The notes beneath the pieces were generated by a model. It was not told where the DNA came from. It did not search any database and saw nothing but the letters and a program-made list of their open reading frames with translations. Shown in pieces: positions 590 to 45,212 of a stretch of DNA of 64,000 nucleotides; position 1 is the first letter of the stretch; every line of letters starts with the position of its first letter. Source of the stretch: Macrostomum lignano (taxonomy: Eukaryota); NCBI GenBank assembly GCA_002269645.1, contig NIVC01000838.1:124001-188000 (forward strand). The letters are read 5' to 3'. The translations under genes and the position numbers were made by a program.

Positions 590-3500
590 CTATTGGTCCA
601 AATTGGCCTTGGAAATGTTCGAGTCACCAAACCGATTCTCAATGACCTGAAACGATGAGTTAATATTTTGTAGACAGTTCTCATCCGCCGACAGCAAGCG
701 GCTTCTATCAGATAGCACCTGGAAAACTGCTGCGTCCGCACGCCGAACTTGAGCAGCCAAGTAATCCAGCATGTCGGCTGCGTCACCGGACTGCAGGTTC
801 CGCATCGACCTAGAATCTAGCTCAACAAACTCCTCCAACGGCGAAACCAAAGATGATGGTACACCAATACCAGATGAAGGCATTGAATATCCGTCAAGAG
901 TGGACAATGCCGAAACACCATCATAAAGCTCCGGACTAGGACTTGCAATGCCCTGCGAATACCGAGGACTAGACAAAGGGACCGGAAAAAGTGTCGACGC
1001 CGATTTCCGCTCCGAATCAATATCCTCCTCTTCTACTAGAGCTGAAGCAGCGCCTCTCTCATCTACGCGACGTCTGTACTCGCCCAGCTCCGAGTCGAGT
1101 CGCTGCAGCGCTACTCGCGTCGCATCTGGCTGCAGCGCCGCTCGCGACTGCTCGACCGAGGTCACGACCGAGTTGTCGAACGGGCCTCCGATGCTTCTAA
1201 GCCGCGACAGTCGATCCGCCATCAGTCTGGCCACTTCCTCGTTCATTGACCTGTCTGGCTGCGCCTGTTGTTCTACTACTGCTGCGTCGTCCGGTATCAC
1301 CTGCGTTTCCTCTTTCTCGTCCTCTGCTAAAGCGGCCGCCGTGGCGCCTCTCTCGTCTACGCGACGTCTGTACTCGCCCAGCTCCGAGTCGAGTCGCTGC
1401 AGCGCTACTCGCGTCGCATCTGGCTGCAGCGCCGCTCGCGACTGCTCGACCGAGGTCACGACCGAGTTGTCGAACGGGCCTCCGATGCTTCTAAGCCGCG
1501 ACAGTCGATCCGCCATCAGTCTGGCCACTTCCTCGTTCATTGACCTGTCTGGCTGCGCCTGTTGTTCTACTACTGCTGCGTCGTCCGGTATCACCTGCGT
1601 TTCCTCTTTCTCGTCCTCTGCTAAAGCGGCCGCCGTGGCGCCTCTCTCGTCTACGCGACGTCTGTACTCGCCCAGCTCCGAGTCGAGTCGCTGCAGCGCT
1701 ACTCGCGTCGCATCTGGCTGCAGCGCCGCTCGCGACTGCTCGACCGAGGTCACGACCGAGTTGTCGAACGGGCCTCCGATGCTTCTAAGCCGCGACAGTC
1801 GATCCGCCATCAGTCTGGCCACTTCCTCGTTCATTGACCTGTCTGGCTGCGCCTGTTGTTCTACTACTGCTGCGTCGTCCGGTATCACCTGCGTTTCCTC
1901 TTTCTCGTCCTCTGCTAAAGCGGCCGCCGTGGCGCCTCTCTCGTCTACGCGACGTCTGTACTCGCCCAGCTCCGAGTCGAGTCGCTGCAGCGCTACTCGC
2001 GTCGCATCTGGCTGCAGCGCCGCTCGCGACTGCTCGACCGAGGTCACGACCGAGTTGTCGAACGGGCCTCCGATGCTTCTAAGCCGCGACAGTCGATCCG
2101 CCATCAGTCTGGCCACTTCCTCGTTCATTGACCTGTCTGGCTGCGCCTGTTGTTCTACTACTGCTGCGTCGTCCGGTATCACCTGCGTTTCCTCTTTCTC
2201 GTCCTCTGCTAAAGCGGCCGCCGTGACGCCTCTCTCGTCTACGCGACGTCTGTACTCGCCCAGCTCCGAGTCGAGTCGCTGCAGCGCTACTCGCGTCGCA
2301 TCTGGCTGCAGCGCCGCTCGCGACTGCTCGACCGAGGTCACGACCGAGTTGTCGAACGGGCCTCCGATGCTTCTAAGCCGCGACAGTCGATCCGCCATCA
2401 GTCTGGCCACTTCCTCGTTCATTGACCTGTCTGGCTGCGCCTGTTGTTCTACTACTGCTGCGTCGTCCGGTATCACCTGCGTTTCCTCTTTCTCGTCCTC
2501 TGCTAAAGCGGCCGCCGTGGCGCCTCTCTCGTCTACGCGACGTCTGTACTCGCCCAGCTCCGAGTCGAGTCGCTGCAGCGCTACTCGCGTCGCATCTGGC
2601 TGCAGCGCCGCTCGCGACTGCTCGACCGAGGTCACGACCGAGTTGTCGAACGGGCCTCCGATGCTTCTAAGCCGCGACAGTCGATCCGCCATCAGTCTGG
2701 CCACTTCCTCGTTCATTGACCTGTCTGGCTGCGCCTGTTGTTCTACTACTGCTGCGTCGTCCGGTATCACCTGCGTTTCCTCTTTCTCGTCCTCTGCTAA
2801 AGCGGCCGCCGTGGCGCCTCTCTCGTCTACGCGACGTCTGTACTCGCCCAGCTCCGAGTCGAGTCGCTGCAGCGCTACTCGCGTCGCATCTGGCTGCAGC
2901 GCCGCTCGCGACTGCTCGACCGAGGTCACGACCGAGTTGTCGAACGGGCCTCCGATGCTTCTAAGCCGCGACAGTCGATCCGCCATCAGTCTGGCCACTT
3001 CCTCGTTCATTGACCTGTCTGGCTGCGCCTGTTGTTCTACTACTGCTGCGTCGTCCGGTATCACCTGCGTTTCCTCTTTCTCGTCCTCTGCTAAAGCGGC
3101 CGCCGTGGCGCCTCTCTCGTCTACGCGACGTCTGTACTCGCCCAGCTCCGAGTCGAGTCGCTGCAGCGCTACTCGCGTCGCATCTGGCTGCAGCGCCGCT
3201 CGCGACTGCTCGACCGAGGTCACGACCGAGTTGTCGAACGGGCCTCCGATGCTTCTAAGCCGCGACAGTCGATCCGCCATCAGTCTGGCCACTTCCTCGT
3301 TCATTGACCTGTCTGGCTGCGCCTGTTGTTCTACTACTGCTGCGTCGTCCGGTATCACCTGCGTTTCCTCTTTCTCGTCCTCTGCTAAAGCGGCCGCCGT
3401 GGCGCCTCTCTCGTCTACGCGACGTCTGTACTCGCCCAGCTCCGAGTCGAGTCGCTGCAGCGCTACTCGCGTCGCATCTGGCTGCAGCGCCGCTCGCGAC

Positions 3501-6500
3501 TGCTCGACCGAGGTCACGACCGAGTTGTCGAACGGGCCTCCGATGCTTCTAAGCCGCGACAGTCGATCCGCCATCAGTCTGGCCACTTCCTCGTTCATTG
3601 ACCTGTCTGGCTGCGCCTGTTGTTCTACTACTGCTGCGTCGTCCGGTATCACCTGCGTTTCCTCTTTCTCGTCCTCTGCTAAAGCGGCCGGGGCGCCTCT
3701 CTCATTTACGCGACGTCTGTACTCGCCCAGCTCCGAGTCGAGTCGCTGCAGCGCTACTCGCGTCGCATCTGGCTGCAGCGCCGCTCGCGACTGCTCGACC
3801 GAGGTCACGACCGAGTTGTCGAACGGGCCTCCGATGCTTCTAAGCCGCGACAGTCGATCCGCCATCAGTCTGGCCACTTCCTCGTTCATTGACCTGTCTG
3901 GCTGCGCCTGTTGTTCTACTACTGCTGCGTCGTCCGGTATCACCTGCGTTTCCTCTTTCTCGTCCTCTGCTAAAGCGGCCGCCGTGGCGCCTCTCTCGTC
4001 TACGCGACGTCTGTACTCGCCCAGCTCCGAGTCGAGTCGCTGCAGCGCTACTCGCGTCGCATCTGGCTGCAGCGCCGCTCGCGACTGCTCGACCGAGGTC
4101 ACGACCGAGTTGTCGAACGGGCCTCCGATGCTTCTAAGCCGCGACAGTCGATCCGCCATCAGTCTGGCCACTTCCTCGTTCATTGACCTGTCTGGCTGCG
4201 CCTGTTGTTCTACTACTGCTGCGTCGTCCGGTATCACCTGCGTTTCCTCTTTCTCGTCCTCTGCTAAAGCGGCCGCCGTGGCGCCTCTCTCGTCTACGCG
4301 ACGTCTGTACTCGCCCAGCTCCGAGTCGAGTCGCTGCAGCGCTACTCGCGTCGCATCTGGCTGCAGCGCCGCTCGCGACTGCTCGACCGAGGTCACGACC
4401 GAGCTGTCGAACGGGCCTCCGATGCTTCTAAGCTGCGACAGTCGATCCGCCATCAGTCTGGCCACTTCCTCGTTCAATAGCTCTTCTAAAGTGTCAAACT
4501 TAAGTGACATTTTCGTTGGATTAATAACGTCGAGTCCTTGATGGTGGACCTGGTCGTCAGCGATTTCGGAATGGCTGTCTATTTCGACTATTAGTGGCCC
4601 AAGTTGAGGTAGTTTTGAGACTGTGCGGTCTTGTTGCTCCCAAACTCCCGTAGATAGTATATACGTTTTTGTTGTATCGAAGTCGGTTGTGAAGTACTTT
4701 AATAGTTGTTTCATTCGAAAAATAGACCTTCTTGCCGCTCTAGCCTTCTTTTTATCTTGCATATGACAGTCTAACATTTCGTCTGCCTTAGCGAATAGCA
4801 TCGCGTACTTTTGCCAAGTGTTGCCTTGAAAGTTGGTACTTAGATACGCTTTAAGTAGCTTTTCTCTCGTTTCTTTCGAAAAATATCTTAACTCACGATG
4901 ATGAACTGGAATACGGCAGAGAGCGCACTGAATGACTTCAAGATGATTTTTGTCCGCCTGAACAATATATTGAATTGATTTTAGCAAAGCATACTCGAAT
5001 TTCGTCAAAGATTTGCTTAGCCTGGCGTATCTTTCAATAGCCAACACTGTCTCGCGGTAACTACGAGACGCTTCAGTTATATGGCTCTGCAGTGTCTCAC
5101 TTATTTTCAGGAGACATACGTGAACGCCAGACCAGTACTGACCGTACCGCTGAAATGTCTTCACGGCTGAGAAATATTGCTCAGAAAAATAATGCAGACC
5201 GACACAGGCAGCGTCTGCGGGAACAACATCCGCGTCACCGAACCTCTCAATCCACAATGAGAGATATGAAAATGATGCCTCGTTGCGCTTTCTAATCTCG
5301 GACCAAAGAGGTTCTTGCTGAACCGCGAAAAGAATTTCTTTAACAGGACCACAAACCAAATCCTCTCTAAACAATGAAGTCATTAGTTGAAGCTGACGCA
5401 CTAACTGTCGAAGGGCAGCTCCAACAAACTGTGCCTGAAGTACGCAGCAAAATGCCGTAAGACCACGATCAACCCTATAACGAAACCAATCAAAAACGCT
5501 CAAAAGCCGTTCAATGCTGCACACCATGGAATCCGTCAAATAAAAATGTTTAGAAAAAGATGTCAAATTTTCATCAAATGCTTCAGAGAGGATGTATGCT
5601 TCAGCATCTGCTTCTGGCTCTTCCTCCTCCTGTTCTGGCGCTGCAGCTTCCGCCTGTTCAGCTGCGGTGATCTCATCAAGGCGGCGCTTGTACTCTGCCA
5701 GCTCCGCGTTCAGTCGCTGCATCGCTCCGGGTCTAGCTGAATGCTGCAGCGCGGCTCGCGCCTGCTCCACCGACGTCAGCACCGAGGCGTCGAACAGTCC
5801 GATGCGATTCAGACGCGCCAGTCGCTCGATCGTAGCGTCAAACAGTGCCGCGTTCATTGCCGCGTCCTCGACGACCGGCTCAGCTTCTGGCTCTTCCTCC
5901 TCCTGTTCTGGCGCTGCAGCTTCCGCCTGTTCAGCTGCGGTGATCTCATCAAGGCGGCGCTTGTACTCTGCCAGCTCCGCGTTCAGTCGCTGCATCGCTC
6001 CGGGTCTAGCTGAATGCTGCAGCGCGGCTCGCGCCTGCTCCACCGACGTCAGCACCGAGGCGTCGAACAGTCCGATGCGATTCAGACGCGCCAGTCGCTC
6101 GATCGTAGCGTCAAACAGTGCCGCGTTCATTGCCGCGTCCTCGACGACCGGCTCAGCTTCTGGCTCTTCCTCCTCCTGTTCTGGCGCTGCAGCTTCCGCC
6201 TGTTCAGCTGCGGTGATCTCATCAAGGCGGCGCTTGTACTCTGCCAGCTCCGCGTTCAGTCGCTGCATCGCTCCGGGTCTAGCTGAATGCTGCAGCGCGG
6301 CTCGCGCCTGCTCCACCGACGTCAGCACCGAGGCGTCGAACAGTCCGATGCGATTCAGACGCGCCAGTCGCTCGATCGTAGCGTCAAACAGTGCCGCGTT
6401 CATTGCCGCGTCCTCGACGACCGGCTCAGCTTCTGGCTCTTCCTCCTCCTGTTCTGGCGCTGCAGCTTCCGCCTGTTCAGCTGCGGTGATCTCATCAAGG

Positions 6501-9500
6501 CGGCGCTTGTACTCTGCCAGCTCCGCGTTCAGTCGCTGCATCGCTCCGGGTCTAGCTGAATGCTGCAGCGCGGCTCGCGCCTGCTCCACCGACGTCAGCA
6601 CCGAGGCGTCGAACAGTCCGATGCGATTCAGACGCGCCAGTCGCTCGATCGTAGCGTCAAACAGTGCCGCGTTCATTGCCGCGTCCTCGACGACCGGCTC
6701 AGCTTCTGGCTCTTCCTCCTCCTGTTCTGGCGCTGCAGCTTCCGCCTGTTCAGCTGCGGTGATCTCATCAAGGCGGCGCTTGTACTCTGCCAGCTCCGCG
6801 TTCAGTCGCTGCATCGCTCCGGGTCTAGCTGAATGCTGCAGCGCGGCTCGCGCCTGCTCCACCGACGTCAGCACCGAGGCGTCGAACAGTCCGATGCGAT
6901 TCAGACGCGCCAGTCGCTCGATCGTAGCGTCAAACAGTGCCGCGTTCATTGCCGCGTCCTCGACGACCGGCTCAGCTTCTGGCTCTTCCTCCTCCTGTTC
7001 TGGCGCTGCAGCTTCCGCCTGTTCAGCTGCGGTGATCTCATCAAGGCGGCGCTTGTACTCTGCCAGCTCCGCGTTCAGTCGCTGCATCGCTCCGGGTCTA
7101 GCTGAATGCTGCAGCGCGGCTCGCGCCTGCTCCACCGACGTCAGCACCGAGGCGTCGAACAGTCCGATGCGATTCAGACGCGCCAGTCGCTCGATCGTAG
7201 CGTCAAACAGTGCCGCGTTCATTGCCGCGTCCTCGACGACCGGCTCAGCTTCTGGCTCTTCCTCCTCCTGTTCTGGCGCTGCAGCTTCCGCCTGTTCAGC
7301 TGCGGTGATCTCATCAAGGCGGCGCTTGTACTCTGCCAGCTCCGCGTTCAGTCGCTGCATCGCTCCGGGTCTAGCTGAATGCTGCAGCGCGGCTCGCGCC
7401 TGCTCCACCGACGTCAGCACCGAGGCGTCGAACAGTCCGATGCGATTCAGACGCGCCAGTCGCTCGATCGTAGCGTCAAACAGTGCCGCGTTCATTGCCG
7501 CGTCCTCGACGACCGGCTCAGCTTCTGGCTCTTCCTCCTCCTGTTCTGGCGCTGCAGCTTCCGCCTGTTCAGCTGCGGTGATCTCATCAAGGCGGCGCTT
7601 GTACTCTGCCAGCTCCGCGTTCAGTCGCTGCATCGCTCCGGGTCTAGCTGAATGCTGCAGCGCGGCTCGCGCCTGCTCCACCGACGTCAGCACCGAGGCG
7701 TCGAACAGTCCGATGCGATTCAGACGCGCCAGTCGCTCGATCGTAGCGTCAAACAGTGCCGCGTTCATTGCCGCGTCCTCGACGACCGGCTCAGCTTCTG
7801 GCTCTTCCTCCTCCTGTTCTGGCGCTGCAGCTTCCGCCTGTTCAGCTGCGGTGATCTCATCAAGGCGGCGCTTGTACTCTGCCAGCTCCGCGTTCAGTCG
7901 CTGCATCGCTCCGGGTCTAGCTGAATGCTGCAGCGCGGCTCGCGCCTGCTCCACCGACGTCAGCACCGAGGCGTCGAACAGTCCGATGCGATTCAGACGC
8001 GCCAGTCGCTCGATCGTAGCGTCAAACAGTGCCGCGTTCATTGCCGCGTCCTCGACGACCGGCTCAGCTTCTGGCTCTTCCTCCTCCTGTTCTGGCGCTG
8101 CAGCTTCCGCCTGTTCAGCTGCGGTGATCTCATCAAGGCGGCGCTTGTACTCTGCCAGCTCCGCGTTCAGTCGCTGCATCGCTCCGGGTCTAGCTGAATG
8201 CTGCAGCGCGGCTCGCGCCTGCTCCACCGACGTCAGCACCGAGGCGTCGAACAGTCCGATGCGATTCAGACGCGCCAGTCGCTCGATCGTAGCGTCAAAC
8301 AGTGCCGCGTTCATTGCCGCGTCCTCGACGACCGGCTCAGCTTCTGGCTCTTCCTCCTCCTGTTCTGGCGCTGCAGCTTCCGCCTGTTCAGCTGCGGTGA
8401 TCTCATCAAGGCGGCGCTTGTACTCTGCCAGCTCCGCGTTCAGTCGCTGCATCGCTCCGGGTCTAGCTGAATGCTGCAGCGCGGCTCGCGCCTGCTCCAC
8501 CGACGTCAGCACCGAGGCGTCGAACAGTCCGATGCGATTCAGACGCGCCAGTCGCTCGATCGTAGCGTCAAACAGTGCCGCGTTCATTGCCGCGTCCTCG
8601 ACGACCGGCTCAGCTTCTGGCTCTTCCTCCTCCTGTTCTGGCGCTGCAGCTTCCGCCTGTTCAGCTGCGGTGATCTCATCAAGGCGGCGCTTGTACTCTG
8701 CCAGCTCCGCGTTCAGTCGCTGCATCGCTCCGGGTCTAGCTGAATGCTGCAGCGCGGCTCGCGCCTGCTCCACCGACGTCAGCACCGAGGCGTCGAACAG
8801 TCCGATGCGATTCAGACGCGCCAGTCGCTCGATCGTAGCGTCAAACAGTGCCGCGTTCATTGCCGCGTCCTCGACGACCGGCTCAGCTTCTGGCTCTTCC
8901 TCCTCCTGTTCTGGCGCTGCAGCTTCCGCCTGTTCAGCTGCGGTGATCTCATCAAGGCGGCGCTTGTACTCTGCCAGCTCCGCGTTCAGTCGCTGCATCG
9001 CTCCGGGTCTAGCTGAATGCTGCAGCGCGGCTCGCGCCTGCTCCACCGACGTCAGCACCGAGGCGTCGAACAGTCCGATGCGATTCAGACGCGCCAGTCG
9101 CTCGATCGTAGCGTCAAACAGTGCCGCGTTCATTGCCGCGTCCTCGACGACCGGCTCAGCTTCTGGCTCTTCCTCCTCCTGTTCTGGCGCTGCAGCTTCC
9201 GCCTGTTCAGCTGCGGTGATCTCATCAAGGCGGCGCTTGTACTCTGCCAGCTCCGCGTTCAGTCGCTGCATCGCTCCGGGTCTAGCTGAATGCTGCAGCG
9301 CGGCTCGCGCCTGCTCCACCGACGTCAGCACCGAGGCGTCGAACAGTCCGATGCGATTCAGACGCGCCAGTCGCTCGATCGTAGCGTCAAACAGTGCCGC
9401 GTTCATTGCCGCGTCCTCGACGACCGGCTCAGCTTCTGGCTCTTCCTCCTCCTGTTCTGGCGCTGCAGCTTCCGCCTGTTCAGCTGCGGTGATCTCATCA

Positions 9501-12500
9501 AGGCGGCGCTTGTACTCTGCCAGCTCCGCGTTCAGTCGCTGCATCGCTCCGGGTCTAGCTGAATGCTGCAGCGCGGCTCGCGCCTGCTCCACCGACGTCA
9601 GCACCGAGGCGTCGAACAGTCCGATGCGATTCAGACGCGCCAGTCGCTCGATCGTAGCGTCAAACAGTGCCGCGTTCATTGCCGCGTCCTCGACGACCGG
9701 CTCAGCTTCTGGCTCTTCCTCCTCCTGTTCTGGCGCTGCAGCTTCCGCCTGTTCAGCTGCGGTGATCTCATCAAGGCGGCGCTTGTACTCTGCCAGCTCC
9801 GCGTTCAGTCGCTGCATCGCTCCGGGTCTAGCTGAATGCTGCAGCGCGGCTCGCGCCTGCTCCACCGACGTCAGCACCGAGGCGTCGAACAGTCCGATGC
9901 GATTCAGACGCGCCAGTCGCTCGATCGTAGCGTCAAACAGTGCCGCGTTCATTGCCGCGTCCTCGACGACCGGCTCAGCTTCTGGCTCTTCCTCCTCCTG
10001 TTCTGGCGCTGCAGCTTCCGCCTGTTCAGCTGCGGTGATCTCATCAAGGCGGCGCTTGTACTCTGCCAGCTCCGCGTTCAGTCGCTGCATCGCTCCGGGT
10101 CTAGCTGAATGCTGCAGCGCGGCTCGCGCCTGCTCCACCGACGTCAGCACCGAGGCGTCGAACAGTCCGATGCGATTCAGACGCGCCAGTCGCTCGATCG
10201 TAGCGTCAAACAGTGCCGCGTTCATTGCCGCGTCCTCGACGACCGGCTCAGCTTCTGGCTCTTCCTCCTCCTGTTCTGGCGCTGCAGCTTCCGCCTGTTC
10301 AGCTGCGGTGATCTCATCAAGGCGGCGCTTGTACTCTGCCAGCTCCGCGTTCAGTCGCTGCATCGCTCCGGGTCTAGCTGAATGCTGCAGCGCGGCTCGC
10401 GCCTGCTCCACCGACGTCAGCACCGAGGCGTCGAACAGTCCGATGCGATTCAGACGCGCCAGTCGCTCGATCGTAGCGTCAAACAGTGCCGCGTTCATTG
10501 CCGCGTTTTCTTTTTGGTTTCCTGCTTTTGTTCGTATTGGAATTCTATTGTGTCTGCGATTTCGTTTCGGAATGGTAGCATTTTTGGGAGTGAGTCTGTT
10601 GTTTTTTGTTGTATTTGCCATAATCCGGTCGAAAGTATGTAGTTTCTAGTGTGATCAAAGTCTTTGGTGTAAATATGCAGTAGTCGCTTGAACCTTCCCA
10701 GTGCTTGTCGTCCTACTGGTGCACTTTGACCTTTAGTGAGCTGATGCTGAAGGCCTTTCTCTGCATGCAAAAATATGGATAAAAACTTTTTCCAAGTGGA
10801 CCCCTCCGTTAATAGTAAACGAGGCGCTTGATAAAGAAAGCTTCTAGTTGACTCAGTTAGAAATTCATATCGGAGTTTTTTAAGAGGAATCCGGAGTAAA
10901 GAGCATTGGATCGCCTCACAATAGTAGTCTGTAGCTTCTGAGATATGGCCTATCGCAGTTTTCATTGACAGTTCAAAACGTACCATGTCGCTGTTTAGAA
11001 GTGCGTACTTGTTTAGCATGGCTAAACAATTAGACAATTCTGCTGAAAAATCTGCAACCAAGAATTTATTCATTGATACCATCGATATTTGAAGACCGTG
11101 CCAATATGATCTTCTACTATGTAAAATTTCCAGTTGACGATGTATCGAATTAAAAAATTCTGATAAATTCACGTTCCTACACGACGACAGTTGATTCTCC
11201 GAATTCGATGCAATTTCTATCCAATATGAGATTTGAGCAACTTCAGCAGTATGCCGTTCTGAGATCCATGACCAAAACTTACACCGCATTAGCTCTACCA
11301 TAGTCTGACGAAGAGGCGAAACAAGGAACTGGATCAACTCGGCAGACCTTGCGATACGTAGCTGCTGTAAAACTCCTTTCACAAGAAAACTCGAATGGCA
11401 AAGCTGGACCCCGGATGCTAGGCTACGAATGCCAGGCCGAAGCTCTTGCAAAAACATTGGGCGAGCGTCCACAGTTTATGGAGACCATGTACCAGAGGCA
11501 TAGGAGACAAGGAATCAGACGGATAAACAGAGCACAAGAAGTTAATCTGGTCCACTAAGTCTTTCCAACGCTGCTGCTCGGTTACCTTGTTTTCCTGACC
11601 AATAACCGTCAACATTGACGCTTGCTTCTTGTAAGAATCCAACGCACCGTCGAGGCGTTCCATCGATCCGGGTGTTGCACCACTCGACAGCAGAGCCCGT
11701 GCCATTCGACAGATGTCAGCACCGACTCGTCATACAGTCCAGACGCCTTCAACTTGTTCAGCCTCGAGATCATCAGCTCCGTCACAGCCGCGCTGGTCGG
11801 TGCTGCTTCCTCTGGCGGCTGCTTTGACTCGACACGCTTTCCAACCTCGTCCGTGGAAACCTGTGGCTTCTCGACCTCAGCTGCAGGAGCTTCTGACTTT
11901 GGAGTCTCGTCCGGTTGTACGCCATCTTCCTTGTCAACGACAGCCGCGGCCAGAAGAGCGTCTCTATCTGACGCTTGCTTCTTGTAAGAATCCAACGCAC
12001 CGTCGAGGCGTTCCATCGATCCGGGTGTTGCACCACTCGACAGCAGAGCCCGTGCCATTCCGACAGATGTCAGCACCGACTCGTCATACAGTCCAGACGC
12101 CTTCAACTTGTTCAGCCTCGAGATCATCAGCTCCGTCACAGCCGCGCTGGTCGGTGCTGCTTCCTCTGGCGGCTGCTTTGACTCGACACGCTTTCCAACC
12201 TCGTCCGTGGAAACCTGTGGCTTCTCGACCTCAGCTGCAGGAGCTTCTGACTTTGGAGTCTCGTCCGGTTGTACGCCATCTTCCTTGTCAACGACAGCCG
12301 CGGCCAGAAGAGCGTCTCTATCTGACGCTTGCTTCTTGTAAGAATCCAACGCACCGTCGAGGCGTTCCATCGATCCGGGTGTTGCACCACTCGACAGCAG
12401 AGCCCGTGCCATTCCGACAGATGTCAGCACCGACTCGTCATACAGTCCAGACGCCTTCAACTTGTTCAGCCTCGAGATCATCAGCTCCGTCACAGCCGCG

Positions 12501-15500
12501 CTGGTCGGTGCTGCTTCCTCTGGCGGCTGCTTTGACTCGACACGCTTTCCAACCTCGTCCGTGGAAACCTGTGGCTTCTCGACCTCAGCTGCAGGAGCTT
12601 CTGACTTTGGAGTCTCGTCCGGTTGTACGCCATCTTCCTTGTCAACGACAGCCGCGGCCAGAAGAGCGTCTCTATCTGACGCTTGCTTCTTGTAAGAATC
12701 CAACGCACCGTCGAGGCGTTCCATCGATCCGGGTGTTGCACCACTCGACAGCAGAGCCCGTGCCATTCCGACAGATGTCAGCACCGACTCGTCATACAGT
12801 CCAGACGCCTTCAACTTGTTCAGCCTCGAGATCATCAGCTCCGTCACAGCCGCGCTGGTCGGTGCTGCTTCCTCTGGCGGCTGCTTTGACTCGACACGCT
12901 TTCCAACCTCGTCCGTGGAAACCTGTGGCTTCTCGACCTCAGCTGCAGGAGCTTCTGACTTTGGAGTCTCGTCCGGTTGTACGCCATCTTCCTTGTCAAC
13001 GACAGCCGCGGCCAGAAGAGCGTCTCTATCTGACGCTTGCTTCTTGTAAGAATCCAACGCACCGTCGAGGCGTTCCATCGATCCGGGTGTTGCACCACTC
13101 GACAGCAGAGCCCGTGCCATTCCGACAGATGTCAGCACCGACTCGTCATACAGTCCAGACGCCTTCAACTTGTTCAGCCTCGAGATCATCAGCTCCGTCA
13201 CAGCCGCGCTGGTCGGTGCTGCTTCCTCTGGCGGCTGCTTTGACTCGACACGCTTTCCAACCTCGTCCGTGGAAACCTGTGGCTTCTCGACCTCAGCTGC
13301 AGGAGCTTCTGACTTTGGAGTCTCGTCCGGTTGTACGCCATCTTCCTTGTCAACGACAGCCGCGGCCAGAAGAGCGTCTCTATCTGACGCTTGCTTCTTG
13401 TAAGAATCCAACGCACCGTCGAGGCGTTCCATCGATCCGGGTGTTGCACCACTCGACAGCAGAGCCCGTGCCATTCCGACAGATGTCAGCACCGACTCGT
13501 CATACAGTCCAGACGCCTTCAACTTGTTCAGCCTCGAGATCATCAGCTCCGTCACAGCCGCGCTGGTCGGTGCTGCTTCCTCTGGCGGCTGCTTTGACTC
13601 GACACGCTTTCCAACCTCGTCCGTGGAAACCTGTGGCTTCTCGACCTCAGCTGCAGGAGCTTCTGACTTTGGAGTCTCGTCCGGTTGTACGCCATCTTCC
13701 TTGTCAACGACAGCCGCGGCCAGAAGAGCGTCTCTATCTGACGCTTGCTTCTTGTAAGAATCCAACGCACCGTCGAGGCGTTCCATCGATCCGGGTGTTG
13801 CACCACTCGACAGCAGAGCCCGTGCCATTCCGACAGATGTCAGCACCGACTCGTCATACAGTCCAGACGCCTTCAACTTGTTCAGCCTCGAGATCATCAG
13901 CTCCGTCACAGCCGCGCTGGTCGGTGCTGCTTCCTCTGGCGGCTGCTTTGACTCGACACGCTTTCCAACCTCGTCCGTGGAAACCTGTGGCTTCTCGACC
14001 TCAGCTGCAGGAGCTTCTGACTTTGGAGTCTCGTCCGGTTGTACGCCATCTTCCTTGTCAACGACAGCCGCGGCCAGAAGAGCGTCTCTATCTGACGCTT
14101 GCTTCTTGTAAGAATCCAACGCACCGTCGAGGCGTTCCATCGATCCGGGTGTTGCACCACTCGACAGCAGAGCCCGTGCCATTCCGACAGATGTCAGCAC
14201 CGACTCGTCATACAGTCCAGACGCCTTCAACTTGTTCAGCCTCGAGATCATCAGCTCCGTCACAGCCGCGCTGGTCGGTGCTGCTTCCTCTGGCGGCTGC
14301 TTTGACTCGACACGCTTTCCAACCTCGTCCGTGGAAACCTGTGGCTTCTCGACCTCAGCTGCAGGAGCTTCTGACTTTGGAGTCTCGTCCGGTTGTACGC
14401 CATCTTCCTTGTCAACGACAGCCGCGGCCAGAAGAGCGTCTCTATCTGACGCTTGCTTCTTGTAAGAATCCAACGCACCGTCGAGGCGTTCCATCGATCC
14501 GGGTGTTGCACCACTCGACAGCAGAGCCCGTGCCATTCCGACAGATGTCAGCACCGACTCGTCATACAGTCCAGACGCCTTCAACTTGTTCAGCCTCGAG
14601 ATCATCAGCTCCGTCACAGCCGCGCTGGTCGGTGCTGCTTCCTCTGGCGGCTGCTTTGACTCGACACGCTTTCCAACCTCGTCCGTGGAAACCTGTGGCT
14701 TCTCGACCTCAGCTGCAGGAGCTTCTGACTTTGGAGTCTCGTCCGGTTGTACGCCATCTTCCTTGTCAACGACAGCCGCGGCCAGAAGAGCGTCTCTATC
14801 TGACGCTTGCTTCTTGTAAGAATCCAACGCACCGTCGAGGCGTTCCATCGATCCGGGTGTTGCACCACTCGACAGCAGAGCCCGTGCCATTCCGACAGAT
14901 GTCAGCACCGACTCGTCATACAGTCCAGACGCCTTCAACTTGTTCAGCCTCGAGATCATCAGCTCCGTCACAGCCGCGCTGGTCGGTGCTGCTTCCTCTG
15001 GCGGCTGCTTTGACTCGACACGCTTTCCAACCTCGTCCGTGGAAACCTGTGGCTTCTCGACCTCAGCTGCAGGAGCTTCTGACTTTGGAGTCTCGTCCGG
15101 TTGTACGCCATCTTCCTTGTCAACGACAGCCGCGGCCAGAAGAGCGTCTCTATCTGACGCTTGCTTCTTGTAAGAATCCAACGCACCGTCGAGGCGTTCC
15201 ATCGATCCGGGTGTTGCACCACTCGACAGCAGAGCCCGTGCCATTCCGACAGATGTCAGCACCGACTCGTCATACAGTCCAGACGCCTTCAACTTGTTCA
15301 GCCTCGAGATCATCAGCTCCGTCACAGCCGCGCTGGTCGGTGCTGCTTCCTCTGGCGGCTGCTTTGACTCGACACGCTTTCCAACCTCGTCCGTGGAAAC
15401 CTGTGGCTTCTCGACCTCAGCTGCAGGAGCTTCTGACTTTGGAGTCTCGTCCGGTTGTACGCCATCTTCCTTGTCAACGACAGCCGCGGCCAGAAGAGCG

Positions 15501-18500
15501 TCTCTATCTGACGCTTGCTTCTTGTAAGAATCCAACGCACCGTCGAGGCGTTCCATCGATCCGGGTGTTGCACCACTCGACAGCAGAGCCCGTGCCATTC
15601 CGACAGATGTCAGCACCGACTCGTCATACAGTCCAGACGCCTTCAACTTGTTCAGCCTCGAGATCATCAGCTCCGTCACAGCCGCGCTGGTCGGTGCTGC
15701 TTCCTCTGGCGGCTGCTTTGACTCGACACGCTTTCCAACCTCGTCCGTGGAAACCTGTGGCTTCTCGACCTCAGCTGCAGGAGCTTCTGACTTTGGAGTC
15801 TCGTCCGGTTGTACGCCATCTTCCTTGTCAACGACAGCCGCGGCCAGAAGAGCGTCTCTATCTGACGCTTGCTTCTTGTAAGAATCCAACGCACCGTCGA
15901 GGCGTTCCATCGATCCGGGTGTTGCACCACTCGACAGCAGAGCCCGTGCCATTCCGACAGATGTCAGCACCGACTCGTCATACAGTCCAGACGCCTTCAA
16001 CTTGTTCAGCCTCGAGATCATCAGCTCCGTCACAGCCGCGCTGGTCGGTGCTGCTTCCTCTGGCGGCTGCTTTGACTCGACACGCTTTCCAACCTCGTCC
16101 GTGGAAACCTGTGGCTTCTCGACCTCAGCTGCAGGAGCTTCTGACTTTGGAGTCTCGTCCGGTTGTACGCCATCTTCCTTGTCAACGACAGCCGCGGCCA
16201 GAAGAGCGTCTCTATCTGACGCTTGCTTCTTGTAAGAATCCAACGCACCGTCGAGGCGTTCCATCGATCCGGGTGTTGCACCACTCGACAGCAGAGCCCG
16301 TGCCATTCCGACAGATGTCAGCACCGACTCGTCATACAGTCCAGACGCCTTCAACTTGTTCAGCCTCGAGATCATCAGCTCCGTCACAGCCGCGCTGGTC
16401 GGTGCTGCTTCCTCTGGCGGCTGCTTTGACTCGACACGCTTTCCAACCTCGTCCGTGGAAACCTGTGGCTTCTCGACCTCAGCTGCAGGAGCTTCTGACT
16501 TTGGAGTCTCGTCCGGTTGTACGCCATCTTCCTTGTCAACGACAGCCGCGGCCAGAAGAGCGTCTCTATCTGACGCTTGCTTCTTGTAAGAATCCAACGC
16601 ACCGTCGAGGCGTTCCATCGATCCGGGTGTTGCACCACTCGACAGCAGAGCCCGTGCCATTCCGACAGATGTCAGCACCGACTCGTCATACAGTCCAGAC
16701 GCCTTCAACTTGTTCAGCCTCGAGATCATCAGCTCCGTCACAGCCGCGCTGGTCGGTGCTGCTTCCTCTGGCGGCTGCTTTGACTCGACACGCTTTCCAA
16801 CCTCGTCCGTGGAAACCTGTGGCTTCTCGACCTCAGCTGCAGGAGCTTCTGACTTTGGAGTCTCGTCCGGTTGTACGCCATCTTCCTTGTCAACGACAGC
16901 CGCGGCCAGAAGAGCGTCTCTATCTGACGCTTGCTTCTTGTAAGAATCCAACGCACCGTCGAGGCGTTCCATCGATCCGGGTGTTGCACCACTCGACAGC
17001 AGAGCCCGTGCCATTCCGACAGATGTCAGCACCGACTCGTCATACAGTCCAGACGCCTTCAACTTGTTCAGCCTCGAGATCATCAGCTCCGTCACAGCCG
17101 CGCTGGTCGGTGCTGCTTCCTCTGGCGGCTGCTTTGACTCGACACGCTTTCCAACCTCGTCCGTGGAAACCTGTGGCTTCTCGACCTCAGCTGCAGGAGC
17201 TTCTGACTTTGGAGTCTCGTCCGGTTGTACGCCATCTTCCTTGTCAACGACAGCCGCGGCCAGAAGAGCGTCTCTATCTGACGCTTGCTTCTTGTAAGAA
17301 TCCAACGCACCGTCGAGGCGTTCCATCGATCCGGGTGTTGCACCACTCGACAGCAGAGCCCGTGCCATTCCGACAGATGTCAGCACCGACTCGTCATACA
17401 GTCCAGACGCCTTCAACTTGTTCAGCCTCGAGATCATCAGCTCCGTCACAGCCGCGCTGGTCGGTGCTGCTTCCTCTGGCGGCTGCTTTGACTCGACACG
17501 CTTTCCAACCTCGTCCGTGGAAACCTGTGGCTTCTCGACCTCAGCTGCAGGAGCTTCTGACTTTGGAGTCTCGTCCGGTTGTACGCCATCTTCCTTGTCA
17601 ACGACAGCCGCGGCCAGAAGAGCGTCTCTATCTGACGCTTGCTTCTTGTAAGAATCCAACGCACCGTCGAGGCGTTCCATCGATCCGGGTGTTGCACCAC
17701 TCGACAGCAGAGCCCGTGCCATTCCGACAGATGTCAGCACCGACTCGTCATACAGTCCAGACGCCTTCAACTTGTTCAGCCTCGAGATCATCAGCTCCGT
17801 CACAGCCGCGCTGGTCGGTGCTGCTTCCTCTGGCGGCTGCTTTGACTCGACACGCTTTCCAACCTCGTCCGTGGAAACCTGTGGCTTCTCGACCTCAGCT
17901 GCAGGAGCTTCTGACTTTGGAGTCTCGTCCGGTTGTACGCCATCTTCCTTGTCAACGACAGCCGCGGCCAGAAGAGCGTCTCTATCTGACGCTTGCTTCT
18001 TGTAAGAATCCAACGCACCGTCGAGGCGTTCCATCGATCCGGGTGTTGCACCACTCGACAGCAGAGCCCGTGCCATTCCGACAGATGTCAGCACCGACTC
18101 GTCATACAGTCCAGACGCCTTCAACTTGTTCAGCCTCGAGATCATCAGCTCCGTCACAGCCGCGCTGGTCGGTGCTGCTTCCTCTGGCGGCTGCTTTGAC
18201 TCGACACGCTTTCCAACCTCGTCCGTGGAAACCTGTGGCTTCTCGACCTCAGCTGCAGGAGCTTCTGACTTTGGAGTCTCGTCCGGTTGTACGCCATCTT
18301 CCTTGTCAACGACAGCCGCGGCCAGAAGAGCGTCTCTATCTGACGCTTGCTTCTTGTAAGAATCCAACGCACCGTCGAGGCGTTCCATCGATCCGGGTGT
18401 TGCACCACTCGACAGCAGAGCCCGTGCCATTCCGACAGATGTCAGCACCGACTCGTCATACAGTCCAGACGCCTTCAACTTGTTCAGCCTCGAGATCATC

Positions 18501-18580
18501 AGCTCCGTCACAGCCGCGCTGGTCGGTGCTGCTTCCTCTGGCGGCTGCTTTAAAGCTTTTTCGGAAGATTTTCTTTCCAT
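590..18580 (-). CDS. Giant intronless tandem-repeat protein of unknown family (~5997 aa if three 1-nt deletions are repaired); seen as ORFs 11609-18580, 11418-11705, 10495-11472 and 590-10621
   Basis: The four same-strand ORFs overlap and join by three -1 shifts. All array units are multiples of 3 (354, 273, 294 bp) and keep the frame. The three repeat families share a protein core, and the two spacer domains are homologous at the protein level. The ATG at 18580 follows an in-frame TAA two codons upstream. Confidence 0.75.
1050..4476 (-). repeat. Coding tandem array 3: 294-bp (98-aa) unit, 12 cores
   Basis: Periodicity of 294 seen directly (shadow ORFs at 1246, 1540, 1834 ...). One unit is 291 bp (variant near 3690). 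Point variants lie near 2226 and in the 4400-4435 copy. Confidence 0.95.
4480..5600 (-). other. Unique spacer domain copy A2 (~370 aa) of the giant protein
   Basis: Non-repetitive, AT-richer and fully open. Motifs YWSG, IQCALCRIP, TWQKY and DFDTTKTYILSTGVW match copy A1. Confidence 0.8.
5610..10506 (-). repeat. Coding tandem array 2: 273-bp (91-aa) unit, 18 copies
   Basis: Shadow ORFs every 273 bp from 5741 to 10382. Translated units are identical. Confidence 0.95.
10510..11610 (-). other. Unique spacer domain copy A1 (~365 aa), interrupted by indels
   Basis: Motifs YWHG, IQCSLLRIP, TWKKF and DFDHTRNYILSTGLW align with A2. Confidence 0.75.
11616..18551 (-). repeat. Coding tandem array 1: 354-bp (118-aa) unit, ~19.6 copies
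   Basis: Shadow ORFs every 354 bp. Units look identical except for one missing C near 11707 in the last copy (gccattcgac vs gccattccgac). Confidence 0.95.
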
Positions 18581-18746: not shown

Positions 18747-19989
18747 AATTATGGCTCAGAGATCAAGCGCGACTTTTAGCGGTTGCGGCCTACATGTAAC
18801 CATAGACACTACTATATATGTAGGAGATTGCGTGTTTTTCAAACATTCCTATGCCTTGAGTCTTAGGAAGTGTTGTGTAGGGACCACACAGCATGCCGTG
18901 GTTGACTACAGAGAATTGAGCTAACACAGAGCGCCAATATTTGTATTTTAAGCCGAAGCCAAAATCCCAATTCCTCAGTCTCCTACTTCTCGACCATCGG
19001 CAAGAAGTCAAAAAGATAGGAGTACGAGTATATAGGGTATACAAAGCATTCATGCAATCTATTTCTTAATATGGAAGTATCAAGAAATTTAATGGGCTGA
19101 AGAAACTACAGATGTCCGTTCATTTATTCAATGTGTAGTGAGGCATCTGTCGTATTTGAAAATATCGTAAAAAGAACCGACTCGACATATAACAATCGGC
19201 TTTAAAGTTTGGGAAATTATGCTACAAATACTCGCAGACACAGGTAATAAATTAGTAAGTCGTTGAATTGCAAATATTTGTTTCTAGCCAGACCGACGGA
19301 GGAACTCTTCGACTGCGACTGGCTGTGTGTTGAGACCGTCTCATTGAACAAATTCAGCCGCTGAAGGCTATGCTGGAGCATTGGAAACCAGGCACTAAGC
19401 TGTATATAATGGAGAGGGCAAAGCCACAACGTACACCTGTCAATTATTCAATATGTCAGGCTGTGTGACTTTATAAACGCATCTTTTCGTCATTCAAGAC
19501 CCATTCTTTAGCCGCAGAATGCCGAATTGTCCTATGCTGCCAGCTACGAGTATTCGCTCGATATGCGCAAATAGACTACTAACGATGAGAAGCCTGTAAG
19601 TAGTTATACTAAATAAATAAACGCTAGAAAAGTACAAGAAAGTGTTTCGAAAGTTTAGACACATGCTAAACGTTTGTTCTCTTAATTGGTTCGCACTAAA
19701 TGAACAGGAAAAAAACTAGAGATAAGTATGTAAAATAGGAATAATAATTATTAGTTGGCCGAGAACAAGCATCTTTGAGGGCGGAGATAACGGTTTCGCT
19801 AAAACATAGTCAAATTTTGAAATTAATTGTGACGTTCGACACAAAGAAGCTTTTATATAAATGCGAGGCATTTAAAACATTTTTCGTTCAACAAAAAACA
19901 GAGTTCAAGATTTTTAGGTGGATGGATTTAGCAGGTTTAGGCTCGGTTTAGAAGGCTCAAGATTGAGGTGGTTCATGGGTTCAGTAGGT

Positions 19990-21145
19990 TCCAGGATCAG
20001 TGGGTTCAGGGATCAGTGGGTTAAGAGATCAGTGGGTTAAGAGATCAGTGGGTTCAGGGATCAGTAGGTTCAGGGATCAGTGGGTTCAGGGATCAGTTGG
20101 ATAAGAGATCAGTGGATTAAGAGATCAGTGGGTTCAGGGATCAGTAGGTTCAGGGATCAGTGGGTTCAGGGATCAGTGGGCTCAGGGATCAGTGGGTTCA
20201 GGGATCAGTTGGATAAGAGATCAGTGGATTAAGAGATCAGTGGGTTCAGGGATCAGTAGGTTCAGGGATCAGTGGGTTAAGAGATCAGTGGGTTCAGGGA
20301 TCAGTGGGCTCAGGGATCAGTGGGTTCAGGGATCAGTTGGATAAGAGATCAGTGGATTAAGAGATCAGTGGGTTCAGGGATCAGTGGGTTCAGGGATCAG
20401 TGGGTTAAGAGATCAGTGGGTTCAGGGATCAGTGGGTTAAGAGATCAGTGGGCTCAGGGATCAGTGGGCTCAGGGATCAGTGGGTTCAGGGATCGGTGGG
20501 TTCAGGGATCAGTGGGTTAAGAGATCAGTGGGCTCAGGGATCAGTGGGCTCAGGGATCAGTGGGTTCAGGGATCGGTGGGTTCAGGGATCAGTGGGTTAA
20601 GAGATCAGTGGGTTCAGGGATCAGTGGGTTAAGAGATCAGTGGGCTCAGGGATCAGTGGGTTAAGAGATCAGTGGGTTCAGGGATCAGTGGGTTCAGGGA
20701 TCAGTGAGTTCAGGGATCAATGGGTTCAGGGTTCAGTGGGTTCAGGGATCAGTGGGCTCAGGGATCAGTGAGTTCAGGGATCAGTGAGTTCAGGGATCAG
20801 TGGGTTCAGGGTTCAGCGGGTTCAGGGATCAGTGGGCTCAGGGATCAGTGAGTTCAGGGATCAGTGAGTTCAGGGATCAGTGGGTTAAGGGATCAGTGGG
20901 CTCAGGGATCAGTGAGTTCAGGGATCAGTGAGTTCAGGGATCAGTGGGTTAAGGGATCAGTGGGCTCAGGGATCAGTGGGTTCAAGGATCAGTGGGTTCA
21001 AGGATCAGTGGGCTCAGGGATCAGTGGGCTCAGGAATCAGTGGGTTCAAGGATCAGTGGGCTCAGGGATCAGTGGGCTCAGGGATCAGTGGGTTCAGGGA
21101 TCAGTGGGTTCAGGGATCAGTGGGCTCAGGAATCAGTGGGTTCAT
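19990..21145. repeat. 16-bp minisatellite (GGGATCAGTGGGTTCA)n downstream of the epsilon-tubulin stop
   Basis: Direct periodicity, about 70 copies. Confidence 0.95.
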
Positions 21146-26600: not shown

Positions 26601-27189
26601 GACACACGAGATCGGTAAATAACAAAAAGGTGAATCATTGTCTTGAAAAGTACAAACATTCACCACCGTATGTGTAAAAACAGTTTTACAAATCGTTTTC
26701 CGTGTATATTTTCAACGCCATGGAATGTACACGATAACAGTGGGAATAAGACGCGCTGATTTTTTATGTTGCTAGCAAAGCAAAGAAAACAAGCAAAGCC
26801 AGTAAAGAAGATCATACCGGGACGTACAAGCGTGAAAATTATTTAGATTTATTGGAAATACACTTATTACTATAATCAAAGCTTGGGCAGCATCAAATTC
26901 AACAAAAGTCAGAACAAACAAAATCTATCAATATTGCTTGGCAGCAGGCATGATTTGAGTTGAAAGTGAATACTCAGCAGGAATGTCATGTTTCCATGCA
27001 CTGCCCAGCTGAAGATTGCATGCCACACAGGCGGCGATAACTACAAGTATTAGTTAGAGTTAGAAATAAAATTAAATAATCGATCGAATAACCGTTTGAT
27101 ATTGAAGGGAGATAAGATGGAGTAGGGTAGAGGGAGAGAGAATAGAGGCGAAGAGGAGAGGAAGAGAAAGAGGTAAACAAGGAAAGTGG

Positions 27190-28200: not shown

Positions 28201-28278
28201 GTGAGGAAAGGAGAGGGGAGGATATTGAGCATCCCAAAGCCAGCAGTCCTGCACTTTCCCCAAGACTCAGACCGCCCC

Positions 28279-31077: not shown

Positions 31078-31214
31078 AGGACAGACAGACAGACAGGCAG
31101 GCAGGCAGACAGACAGACAGACAGACAGACAGGCAGACAGACAGACAGACAGACAGACACAGGCAGGCAGGCAGGCAGACAGACAGACAGACAGACAGAC
31201 AGACACAGGCAGGC

Positions 31215-31251
<37 letters not shown>

Positions 31252-31314
31252 GGCAGACAGACAGGCAGACAGACAGAAGGACAGAAGGACAGATTGACAG
31301 ACAGGCAGGCAGGC

Positions 31315-31379
<65 letters not shown>

Positions 31380-31404
31380 CAGGCAGGCAGGCAGGCAGGC
31401 AGGC

Positions 31405-31465
<61 letters not shown>

Positions 31466-31478
31466 CAGGCAGGCAGGC

Positions 31479-31511
<33 letters not shown>

Positions 31512-31545
31512 GGCAGACAGACAGAAGGACAGAAGGACAGATTGA
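31078..31545. repeat. (CAGA)n/(CAGG)n microsatellite
   Basis: Seen directly. Confidence 0.97.
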
Positions 31546-45137: not shown

Positions 45138-45164
45138 CTAAGACAGACAGACAGACAGACAGAC

Positions 45165-45209
<45 letters not shown>

Positions 45210-45212
45210 GGC

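What the first reader, a model, noticed from the sequence alone, without database searches (positions are those of the whole stretch)
1050..18551. Three differently sized repeat families share one homologous ~55-aa three-helix core
Seen: R1 ELMISRLNKLKASGLYDESVLTSVGMARALLSSGATPGSMERLDGALDSYKKQ, R2 DATIERLARLNRIGLFDASVLTSVEQARAALQHSARPGAMQRLNAELAEYKRR, R3 RLMADRLSRLRSIGGPFDNSVVTSVEQSRAALQPDATRVALQRLDSELGEYRRR. Shared pattern: RL..L...G.[FY]D.SV[LV]TSV..[AS]RA.L...A......RL...L..Y[KR][KR]. Only the acidic linkers differ in length and sequence. Conservation of this pattern across diverged DNA indicates selection on the protein and identifies the minus strand as the coding one. Inference: a new small amphipathic three-helix-bundle domain, loosely reminiscent of GA/FIVAR-type modules, with linker length setting the spacing.
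Basis: partly seen in the sequence, partly recalled or inferred. Interest (0 to 1): 0.75.

Follow-up and report, generated by a model that had tools for sequence, protein, structure and literature searches.

The report
Giant orphan helical-repeat protein gene, flatworm
The three repeat arrays are parts of one very large gene of the flatworm Macrostomum lignano that strings about 50 copies of a small, previously undescribed three-helix module on acidic flexible linkers; it is real and species-restricted, and its function is unknown.

Summary
Three near-perfect tandem arrays lie on the minus strand: R3 98 aa x11.7, R2 91 aa x17.9 and R1 118 aa x19.6. They share a homologous core of about 57-69 aa. 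Core alignments score z = 17-25 above shuffled controls, while the linkers score z of about 0.4.

Between families, third codon positions diverge most and dN/dS is 0.36-0.62. The minus strand is therefore coding and the core is under purifying selection.

The window is Macrostomum lignano, 99% identical to assembly GCA_002269645.1. The arrays are separated by two homologous non-repeat, predicted all-helical domains, D1 and D2 (26% identity, E 2e-32). The three frame breaks around D1 are single missing bases at short base runs, and other genome copies read through them. The locus is most likely one gene of about 5,997 codons: R1-D1-R2-D2-R3-tail.

AlphaFold2 predicts three helices per unit (pLDDT 72-88) and disordered acidic linkers. 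Pfam, PDB sequence search and Foldseek gave no significant match. An exhaustive search of 1.84 billion proteins found clear relatives only among M. lignano hypothetical proteins. Bundle packing, amphipathicity and any GA/FIVAR relationship were not demonstrated. Function is inferred only: an intracellular multivalent scaffold or spacer.

The parts
18578..18580 (-). Putative start codon (MERKSSEKALKQPPEE...), three codons downstream of an in-frame stop. AT-rich sequence with stops in all frames lies upstream.
   Evidence: No hydrophobic N-terminal segment. An unrecognised 5' exon cannot be excluded.
11616..18551 (-). R1 array: 354 bp = 118 aa x 19.6. All 19 complete cores are identical at the DNA level.
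10507..11615 (-). D1: non-repeat, homologous to D2, about 330 aa. In this window it is read in three frames because of single-base gaps at 11707 (G where other copies have GG), 11472 (G versus GG) and 10511-10515 (A5 versus A6).
   Evidence: P0012 (PAA54916.1) reads R1 into D1 in one frame.
5610..10506 (-). R2 array: 273 bp = 91 aa x 17.9, 100% identical units.
4477..5609 (-). D2: non-repeat, predicted all-helical domain of about 380 aa containing Cys and Trp. It is in frame with both R2 and R3.
   Evidence: P0016 reads R2-D2-R3 identically in another genome copy.
1050..4476 (-). R3 array: 294 bp = 98 aa x 11.7. One 97-aa unit and three amino-acid variants.
590..1049 (-). C-terminal tail of about 150 aa (Ser/Pro-rich, then a helical end) plus the stop codon at 590-592. 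AATAAA/ATTAAA motifs lie about 480-500 nt downstream.
   Evidence: No homologue found and no Pfam hit.

Best explanation
Window 590-18580 (minus strand) is one very large, probably intronless protein-coding gene of the free-living flatworm Macrostomum lignano. Its layout is R1 array (20 units) - D1 - R2 array (18 units) - D2 - R3 array (12 units) - C-terminal tail, about 5,997 codons and about 640 kDa, pI about 4.6.

Each unit has two parts. The first is a slightly basic module of about 60-70 aa, predicted as helix (20 aa) - loop with the invariant G.[FY]D.S - helix (14 aa) - loop - helix (about 30 aa). The second is a strongly acidic Pro/Glu/Ala-rich linker predicted to be disordered.

Shown: the three unit types descend from one ancestral unit. 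The core is kept by purifying selection while the linkers have diverged beyond recognition. Each array is homogenised to about 100% identity, and array lengths differ between genome copies. Together these point to unequal crossing-over or replication slippage, that is, concerted evolution. D1 and D2 are ancient duplicates, so the gene grew by duplication of an [array + D domain] super-unit.

Inferred: the product is a soluble intracellular 'beads on a string' protein. The about 50 helical modules act as multivalent binding or self-association sites, and the acidic linkers act as flexible, self-repelling spacers. This would make it a scaffold, spacer or elastic element rather than an enzyme.
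For: Species: 99% DNA identity to GCA_002269645.1 contig NIVC01002842.1.

Homology of cores: z = 17-25 against shuffles and 19-22 invariant columns.

Coding strand and selection: the third codon position is least conserved and dN/dS is 0.36-0.62. All periods are multiples of 3. The plus-strand ORFs stop at the array edges, whereas the minus ORF runs through D2.

D1/D2 homology: BLASTP E 2e-32 over 288 aa.

One gene: the three frame breaks are single missing bases at GG, GG and A6 runs relative to the other assembly. That assembly has its own, different single-base deletions in D1 and D2. P0012 reads R1-D1 and P0016 reads R2-D2-R3 in one frame.

Transcription: public gene models BOX15_Mlig011518, Mlig002418 and Mlig012374 cover the locus. 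That annotation is RNA-seq based (PMC5730564).

Structure: AlphaFold2 gives three helices per unit with pLDDT 72-88 and linkers below 50.

Charge: cores +1 to +3, linkers -8 to -13.

No signal peptide or transmembrane-like segment: maximum KD19 is 1.39.

Concerted evolution and copy-number change: within-array identity is about 100%, against 50-68% nucleotide identity between cores. R2 has 17.9 copies here versus about 47 elsewhere, R3 has 11.7 versus 17.5 and at least 23.6, and R1 has 19.6 versus 16.6.
Against: Function is not tested by anything here. There are no expression, localisation or interaction data, and no homologue of known function.

Bundle packing is unverified, and the hydrophobic moments of the predicted helices do not exceed shuffles. 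The AlphaFold2 alignment held only three sequences. D2 folded with pLDDT 38, so its fold is unknown.

The three frame breaks could be real, making this copy a pseudogene or split gene. Only assemblies were compared, not reads. Perfect within-array identity and copy numbers may be partly products of long-read assembly and polishing. A missed 5' exon with a signal peptide would change the cellular compartment.
Confidence: 0.6

Rival explanations
1. The frame breaks are real. This copy is then either two genes (an R1-only protein of 2,323 aa and an R2-D2-R3 protein of 3,343 aa) or a decaying pseudogene copy in a genome with many duplicated segments.
For: As assembled, the window has stops after R1 and within D1. 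M. lignano DV1 carries extensive duplication, with 180-312 Mb in duplicated blocks (PMC5730564), so redundant copies could decay. Public annotation splits the locus into several partial models.
Against: All five indels seen in D1 between the two assemblies are single-base deletions relative to the in-frame version, and they fall at different sites in each assembly. A third copy reads R1-D1 uninterrupted (P0012). The D1 sequence between the breaks is otherwise open and conserved with D2.
Confidence: 0.15
2. The arrays are non-coding satellite DNA. The long ORFs, which are open on both strands, are a by-product of repeating a stop-free unit.
For: The window is full of satellites. Plus-strand ORFs of 1,197-2,305 aa also span the arrays. 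Tandem repeats make up 15% of this genome.
Against: Three arrays with only 50-68% DNA identity keep the same amino-acid pattern, with third-position divergence highest and dN/dS below 1. Unit lengths are all multiples of 3. The minus ORF continues through 1.1 kb of unique sequence (D2), and D1/D2 are protein-level homologues. RNA-based gene models exist.
Confidence: 0.03
3. The protein is secreted through an unrecognised 5' exon carrying a signal peptide. It would act as a large polyanion in an extracellular matrix or secretion such as mucus, rhabdites, eggshell or seminal fluid, or as a counter-ion to the extremely basic adhesion protein Mlig-ap1 during release.
For: Overall pI is 4.6 and linkers carry -8 to -13 per unit. 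M. lignano secretes other giant proteins with adjacent arrays of two repeat sizes: Mlig-ap2 has 21 x 255 aa followed by 25 x 221 aa. Detachment in that species is proposed to use a negatively charged substance of unknown identity (PMC6410801).
Against: No signal peptide or hydrophobic segment is present in the ORF as read. The released factor was proposed to be a small molecule. No Cys-rich or extracellular domains were found. There is no evidence of tail or gland expression.
Confidence: 0.1
4. The units do not fold as independent three-helix bundles. The long third helix (a 3-4-3-4 hydrophobic spacing, M/L-x2-L-x3-L-x2-Y-x3-L) pairs between units or between molecules, giving a fibrous coiled-coil assembly.
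For: Helix 3 is predicted to be about 30 residues long and to run into the linker. It has the highest hydrophobic moment of the three helices in R2 (0.41 versus 0.24 for shuffles). Foldseek finds no compact three-helix domain match.
Against: Helices are broken every 14-30 residues by conserved Gly/Pro loops and are followed by Pro-rich linkers, which is unfavourable for long coiled coils. pLDDT within units is reasonable for a compact arrangement.
Confidence: 0.12

Closest known systems
Macrostomum lignano hypothetical proteins PAA54909.1, PAA54916.1, PAA54910.1 and PAA71394.1 (BOX15_Mlig011518, Mlig002418, Mlig012374)
   Same: They are the same gene or its genomic duplicates. They hold fragments of R1-D1, D2-R3 and R3 with about 99-100% identity.
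   Different: They are partial, fragmented, uncharacterised models. None shows the full R1-D1-R2-D2-R3 architecture or recognises the shared core.
Mlig-ap2 adhesion protein of M. lignano (PMC6410801)
   Same: It is a giant species-restricted protein with two adjacent arrays of different unit size (21 x 255 aa, then 25 x 221 aa) and no homologues in NCBI nr.
   Different: Mlig-ap2 is secreted, Cys-rich and carries vWD, TIL, LDL-receptor and TSP1 domains. The protein here has none of these, has units of 91-118 aa and is acidic.
Spectrin repeat (Pfam PF00435)
   Same: It is a tandem all-helical three-helix module. It gives the best weak Pfam hits for R2 and R3 (19.4 and 14.9 bits).
   Different: The hits are below the gathering score of 29.9. 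Spectrin repeats are about 106 aa and are joined by continuous helices, not by disordered acidic linkers.
GA module and FIVAR repeats of Gram-positive surface proteins
   Same: They are small helical modules of about 45-60 aa, repeated in tandem and separated by linkers.
   Different: No Pfam match even at E <= 1. Those are bacterial, wall-anchored and secreted, whereas this is an animal gene without a signal peptide. No fold match was found.
Giant tandem-repeat cytoskeleton-associated proteins of protists, such as trypanosome MARP and FRA/H49-type repeat antigens (from general knowledge, not tested here)
   Same: They have dozens of near-identical units of 38-120 aa in very large, lineage-restricted proteins. 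The arrays are homogenised and variable in copy number.
   Different: There is no sequence relationship and the organisms are different. Binding to microtubules or any other polymer is not shown here.
Titin PEVK-type entropic-spring segments (from general knowledge)
   Same: The Pro/Glu/Ala/Val-rich linkers are acidic and predicted disordered, and they sit between folded modules.
   Different: Linkers here are short (about 15-60 aa) and alternate regularly with helical modules. No homology was detected.

Membership tests
Spectrin repeat (PF00435) | Score at or above the Pfam gathering threshold (29.9 bits) | tested here: not met
   19.4 bits for R2x2 and 14.9 bits for R3x2
Spectrin repeat (PF00435) | Unit of about 106 aa with helix C continuous into helix A of the next unit | tested here: not met
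   Units are 91-118 aa, but only about 60-70 aa is helical. Consecutive cores are separated by segments of pLDDT below 50.
GA module (PF01468) / FIVAR (PF07554) | Sequence match to the family profile | tested here: not met
   Neither family is listed at E <= 1 for any of the three two-unit queries
GA module (PF01468) / FIVAR (PF07554) | Occurs in secreted, cell-wall-anchored bacterial surface proteins | tested here: not met
   The locus is from the flatworm M. lignano. No signal peptide or hydrophobic segment.
GA module (PF01468) / FIVAR (PF07554) | Compact three-helix bundle fold | tested here: inconclusive
   Three helices per unit are predicted, but packing could not be inspected and Foldseek gave no match with E < 0.38
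M. lignano adhesion proteins Mlig-ap1/ap2 | KR-rich regions with pI above 14 (ap1), or 255/221-aa repeats with vWD/TIL/TSP1 domains (ap2) | tested here: not met
   pI 4.6, no such Pfam domains, units of 91-118 aa. The defining features are taken from PMC6410801.
Uncharacterised M. lignano protein cluster (PAA54909, PAA71394 and others) | Near-identical sequence and the same locus in the public assembly | tested here: met
   99% DNA identity over 8.7 kb and across D1. Profile hits at E 0 to 1e-30.
Concertedly evolving coding tandem arrays (protein VNTR) | Within-array identity far above between-array identity, and copy number varying between genomic copies | tested here: met
   About 100% within arrays versus 50-68% between cores. 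R2 17.9 versus about 47, R3 11.7 versus 17.5 and at least 23.6. Caveat: these are assemblies, not reads.

The most novel reading that the evidence does not exclude
The core is a new protein fold or family that arose within the Macrostomum lineage and was amplified into about 50 copies. The polyanionic giant protein would have a lineage-specific mechanical or charge-based role. One example would be the still unidentified negatively charged partner that neutralises the extremely basic adhesion protein Mlig-ap1 during rapid detachment.
Probability: 0.05. Interest if true: 0.7.

Novelty: new variant of a known kind. Interest (0 to 1): 0.35.

Why it matters
This is a clean natural example of how a giant repeat protein is built. 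An [array + domain] super-unit was duplicated. Single founder units were then amplified and homogenised independently, with selection visibly holding a module of about 60 aa while the linkers diverged freely.

The module has no clear relative among 1.84 billion representative proteins, so it is a candidate lineage-restricted domain. M. lignano is a tractable laboratory model with RNAi, in situ hybridisation and transgenesis, so the function is directly testable.

The practical lesson for annotation is that public models of this locus are fragmented by repeat collapse and by single-base errors at base runs. Without functional data the finding remains a well-described orphan, of moderate interest.

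Tried and rejected
Pfam scan of two-unit queries, D2 and the tail: nothing above the cut-offs. The best hits were HBM 22.3 bits against a cut-off of 29.8, and Spectrin 19.4 against 29.9.

PDB sequence profile search: only KDPG-aldolase and designed-cage chains at E 0.008-0.5, taken as chance.

Foldseek of the three-unit model against PDB: best E 0.38. The weak hits to MIT and Vta1 three-helix domains at E of about 2 are not usable.

AlphaFold2 of D2: pLDDT 38.5, so no fold search was run on it.

Word-index searches with the unit profile, the D1/D2 profile and the tail found only M. lignano proteins or nothing.

The exhaustive HMMER search gave seven weak non-flatworm hits (E 1e-7 to 6e-4). These are short partial matches summed over repeats in unrelated repeat proteins (TPR-like, villin-headpiece repeats, a Mycobacteriaceae protein) and were rejected as homologues.

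Test of whether D domains are degenerate cores: hhalign E 0.018, probability 2.5%, not significant.

Hydrophobic-moment test for amphipathicity: not above shuffles.

Literature search for the gene identifiers: none in main texts or in the held supplements of PMC5730564.

Identity with Mlig-ap1 or Mlig-ap2: rejected on composition, repeat size and domains.
Full report
**1. What is in the sequence**

- 1050-4476: period 294 bp, 11.7 copies, 99% matches.
- 5610-10506: period 273 bp, 17.9 copies, 100% matches.
- 11616-18551: period 354 bp, 19.6 copies, 99% matches.

All three periods are multiples of three.

The minus strand has an ORF of 3,343 aa (590..10621) and one of 2,323 aa (11609..18580). 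The plus strand also has long ORFs, but they are confined to the arrays.

**2. Is the shared core more than chance?**

Yes.
- Local alignment scores of the cores are 97-132, against 21-22 +/- 4 for 5,000 shuffles (maximum 55). This gives z = 17.6-24.9.
- The linkers alone score like their own shuffles, with z 0.3-0.5.
- A profile scan of all six reading frames finds 50 full cores plus one partial, all inside the arrays.

**3. Coding strand and selection**

I codon-aligned the three consensus cores (69 codons). Nucleotide identity is 0.50-0.68. By codon position it is 0.59-0.72, 0.50-0.71 and 0.40-0.60 for positions 1, 2 and 3, so third positions are least conserved in the minus-strand frame.

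Nei-Gojobori dN/dS is 0.53 for R1-R2, 0.36 for R1-R3 and 0.62 for R2-R3. dS is 0.6 to 1.8. This indicates moderate purifying selection on an old divergence.

Within arrays the picture is the opposite. All 19 complete R1 cores and all 18 R2 cores are identical at the DNA level. R3 has three amino-acid variants and one 97-aa unit.

**4. Surroundings: one gene, with two further homologous domains**

The 3,343-aa ORF runs R2 array - about 380 aa of unique sequence (D2) - R3 array - a tail of about 150 aa.

The 1.1-kb spacer between R1 and R2 (D1) translates, in pieces, into a protein homologous to D2. BLASTP gives 26% identity over 288 aa, E 2e-32, including the shared stretch D-F-D-x-T-x-x-Y-I-L-S-T-G-[LV]-W.

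In the window, D1 needs three frame changes. Each is a single missing base relative to the public M. lignano contig:
- G instead of GG at 11707.
- G instead of GG at 11472.
- A5 instead of A6 at 10511-10515.

That contig has single-base deletions of its own, at other sites in D1 and D2. A third genomic copy reads R1 into D1 in one frame (P0012), and another reads R2-D2-R3 exactly as the window does (P0016).

The simplest reading is that these gaps are assembly errors and the locus is one ORF: (17,991 + 3)/3 = 5,998 codons including the stop. A real split or a pseudogene copy remains possible. I give that about 15%.

**5. Organism and relatives**

The window is 99% identical to Macrostomum lignano assembly GCA_002269645.1, contig NIVC01002842.1.

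Searches for relatives gave the following:
- The word-indexed search of 5.8 billion proteins with the unit profile and with the D profile returned only M. lignano hypothetical proteins.
- The tail returned nothing.
- The exhaustive HMMER search of 1.84 billion representatives with the core profile found three strong hits, all M. lignano (E 0, 1.5e-65, 1.5e-29).
- It also found seven weak partial hits (E 1e-7 to 6e-4) in unrelated repeat proteins.

The most suggestive weak hit is a Mycobacteriaceae protein with repeats such as LKNLNASGLFDASQLTNI. It reaches only 42% hhalign probability. I treat it as a short convergent motif.

The libraries used are weak on flatworm transcriptomes, so 'restricted to M. 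lignano' means restricted within what was searched.

The public gene models at this locus come from an RNA-seq-guided annotation (PMC5730564). That is indirect evidence of transcription.

**6. Structure**

AlphaFold2 was run on three consecutive R2 units, with R1 and R3 as the only alignment rows. For each unit it predicts helix 2-21, helix 26-39 and helix 45-74, with pLDDT 72-88. The acidic linker falls below 50. Mean pLDDT is 72.4 and pTM 0.32, as expected for units joined flexibly.

The invariant residues sit at the helix 1 / loop / helix 2 junction (G.[FY]D.SV.TSV) and on one face of helix 3 (RL...L..Y).

I could not inspect the model coordinates, so packing into a bundle is not shown. Further negative or inconclusive results:
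- Foldseek against PDB gave nothing better than E 0.38.
- PDB sequence search gave only chance-level hits.
- Pfam gave nothing above its cut-offs, and GA and FIVAR did not appear at all.
- A simple Eisenberg hydrophobic-moment test did not lift any helix above its own shuffles, so 'amphipathic' is not established.
- D2 is predicted all-helical, but at pLDDT 38.5 this gives no usable fold.

**7. Physical character**

- Cores carry +1 to +3 net charge and linkers -8 to -13.
- Linkers are 57-79% Pro/Glu/Asp/Ala/Gln.
- Both ORFs have pI of about 4.6.
- There is no N-terminal hydrophobic segment and no transmembrane-like stretch; maximum 19-residue Kyte-Doolittle mean is 1.39.

**8. How it evolved (shown) and how it probably works (inferred)**

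Shown:
- An ancestral [units + D domain] block was duplicated. This follows from D1/D2 being homologous and each following an array.
- In each block one unit type has been amplified and is kept uniform.
- Array lengths differ strongly among genomic copies: R1 19.6 versus 16.6, R2 17.9 versus about 47, and R3 11.7 versus 17.5 and at least 23.6.
- That pattern is the signature of unequal crossing-over or replication slippage. The caveat is that long-read assemblies can distort arrays.

Inferred: the protein is a soluble, intracellular 'beads on a string' molecule. About 50 small helical modules act as multivalent interaction sites. The acidic linkers act as flexible, mutually repelling spacers. 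This would be a scaffold, spacer or elastic element. Nothing here tests that.

**9. Comparison with known systems**

- It is not Mlig-ap1 or Mlig-ap2. Their composition, repeat sizes and domains differ (PMC6410801). Mlig-ap2 does show that adjacent arrays of two unit sizes in a giant orphan protein have a precedent in this species.
- It fails the membership tests for spectrin repeats and for GA/FIVAR.
- Its closest functional analogies are giant homogenised repeat proteins of protist cytoskeletons and PEVK-like spacers. These are analogies from general knowledge only.

**10. Verdict**

The GA/FIVAR likeness, amphipathicity and bundle packing are not shown.

Novelty: a new variant of a known kind, namely an orphan helical module in a concertedly evolving giant repeat protein. 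Its fragments are already deposited as hypothetical proteins. Interest is moderate, at 0.35.

Noticed in passing
window 19970-63848: The rest of the window is packed with mini- and microsatellites: 16 bp x73 (19970-21144), 21 bp x83 (21616-23354), GGAGA x210 (27189-28222), GACA/AGAC/TAAC runs (31080-31549, 45141-45670, 63419-63848), 34 bp x40 (46172-47514) and an AT-rich 34-bp satellite x166 (52527-58184). The 16-bp and 21-bp arrays also lie upstream of the gene in the public contig (L002 790-3365).
   Followed up: partly
window 41025-41363 (+): An ORF fragment matches the Pfam Vinculin family (PF01044, 39.6 bits, cut-off 38.1). It is probably an exon of a vinculin or alpha-catenin-like gene.
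   Followed up: partly
window 59292-59744 (+): An ORF of 150 aa encodes an EF-hand calcium-binding protein (EF-hand_6, _1 and _7 hits, E about 1e-12).
   Followed up: partly
window 35157-36338 (-): An ORF of 393 aa has a weak C2H2 zinc-finger hit (24.1 bits, below the cut-off of 27) and a long Pro-rich stretch.
   Followed up: partly
L001 about 12161-12420; L003 about 8560-8575: The public Mlig_3_7 contigs break (runs of N) inside the R3 array. One scaffold (L003) joins an inverted R3-D2-R2 copy head-to-head with a forward R3-tail copy, probably a scaffolding artefact at the repeats.
   Followed up: partly
P0006 (MBY0442813.1, Mycobacteriaceae MAG), residues about 414-466: A bacterial repeat protein carries repeats of about 22 aa, 'L..L.A.GL[FY]DAS.LTN', resembling the helix 1-loop-helix 2 motif of the core. 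HMMER E is 1.6e-5 summed over six stretches and hhalign probability is 42%. This is probably convergence of a short motif, and it remains unexplained.
   Followed up: partly
window 4970-5038 (-), within D2: The D2 segment VLAIERYARLSKSLTKFEYALLKSIQYI resembles core helix 1-2 (IERLARLNRIGLFDASVLTSVEQ). hhalign E is 0.018 and tblastn E is 1.9, neither significant. It hints that D domains may contain a degenerate unit.
   Followed up: partly
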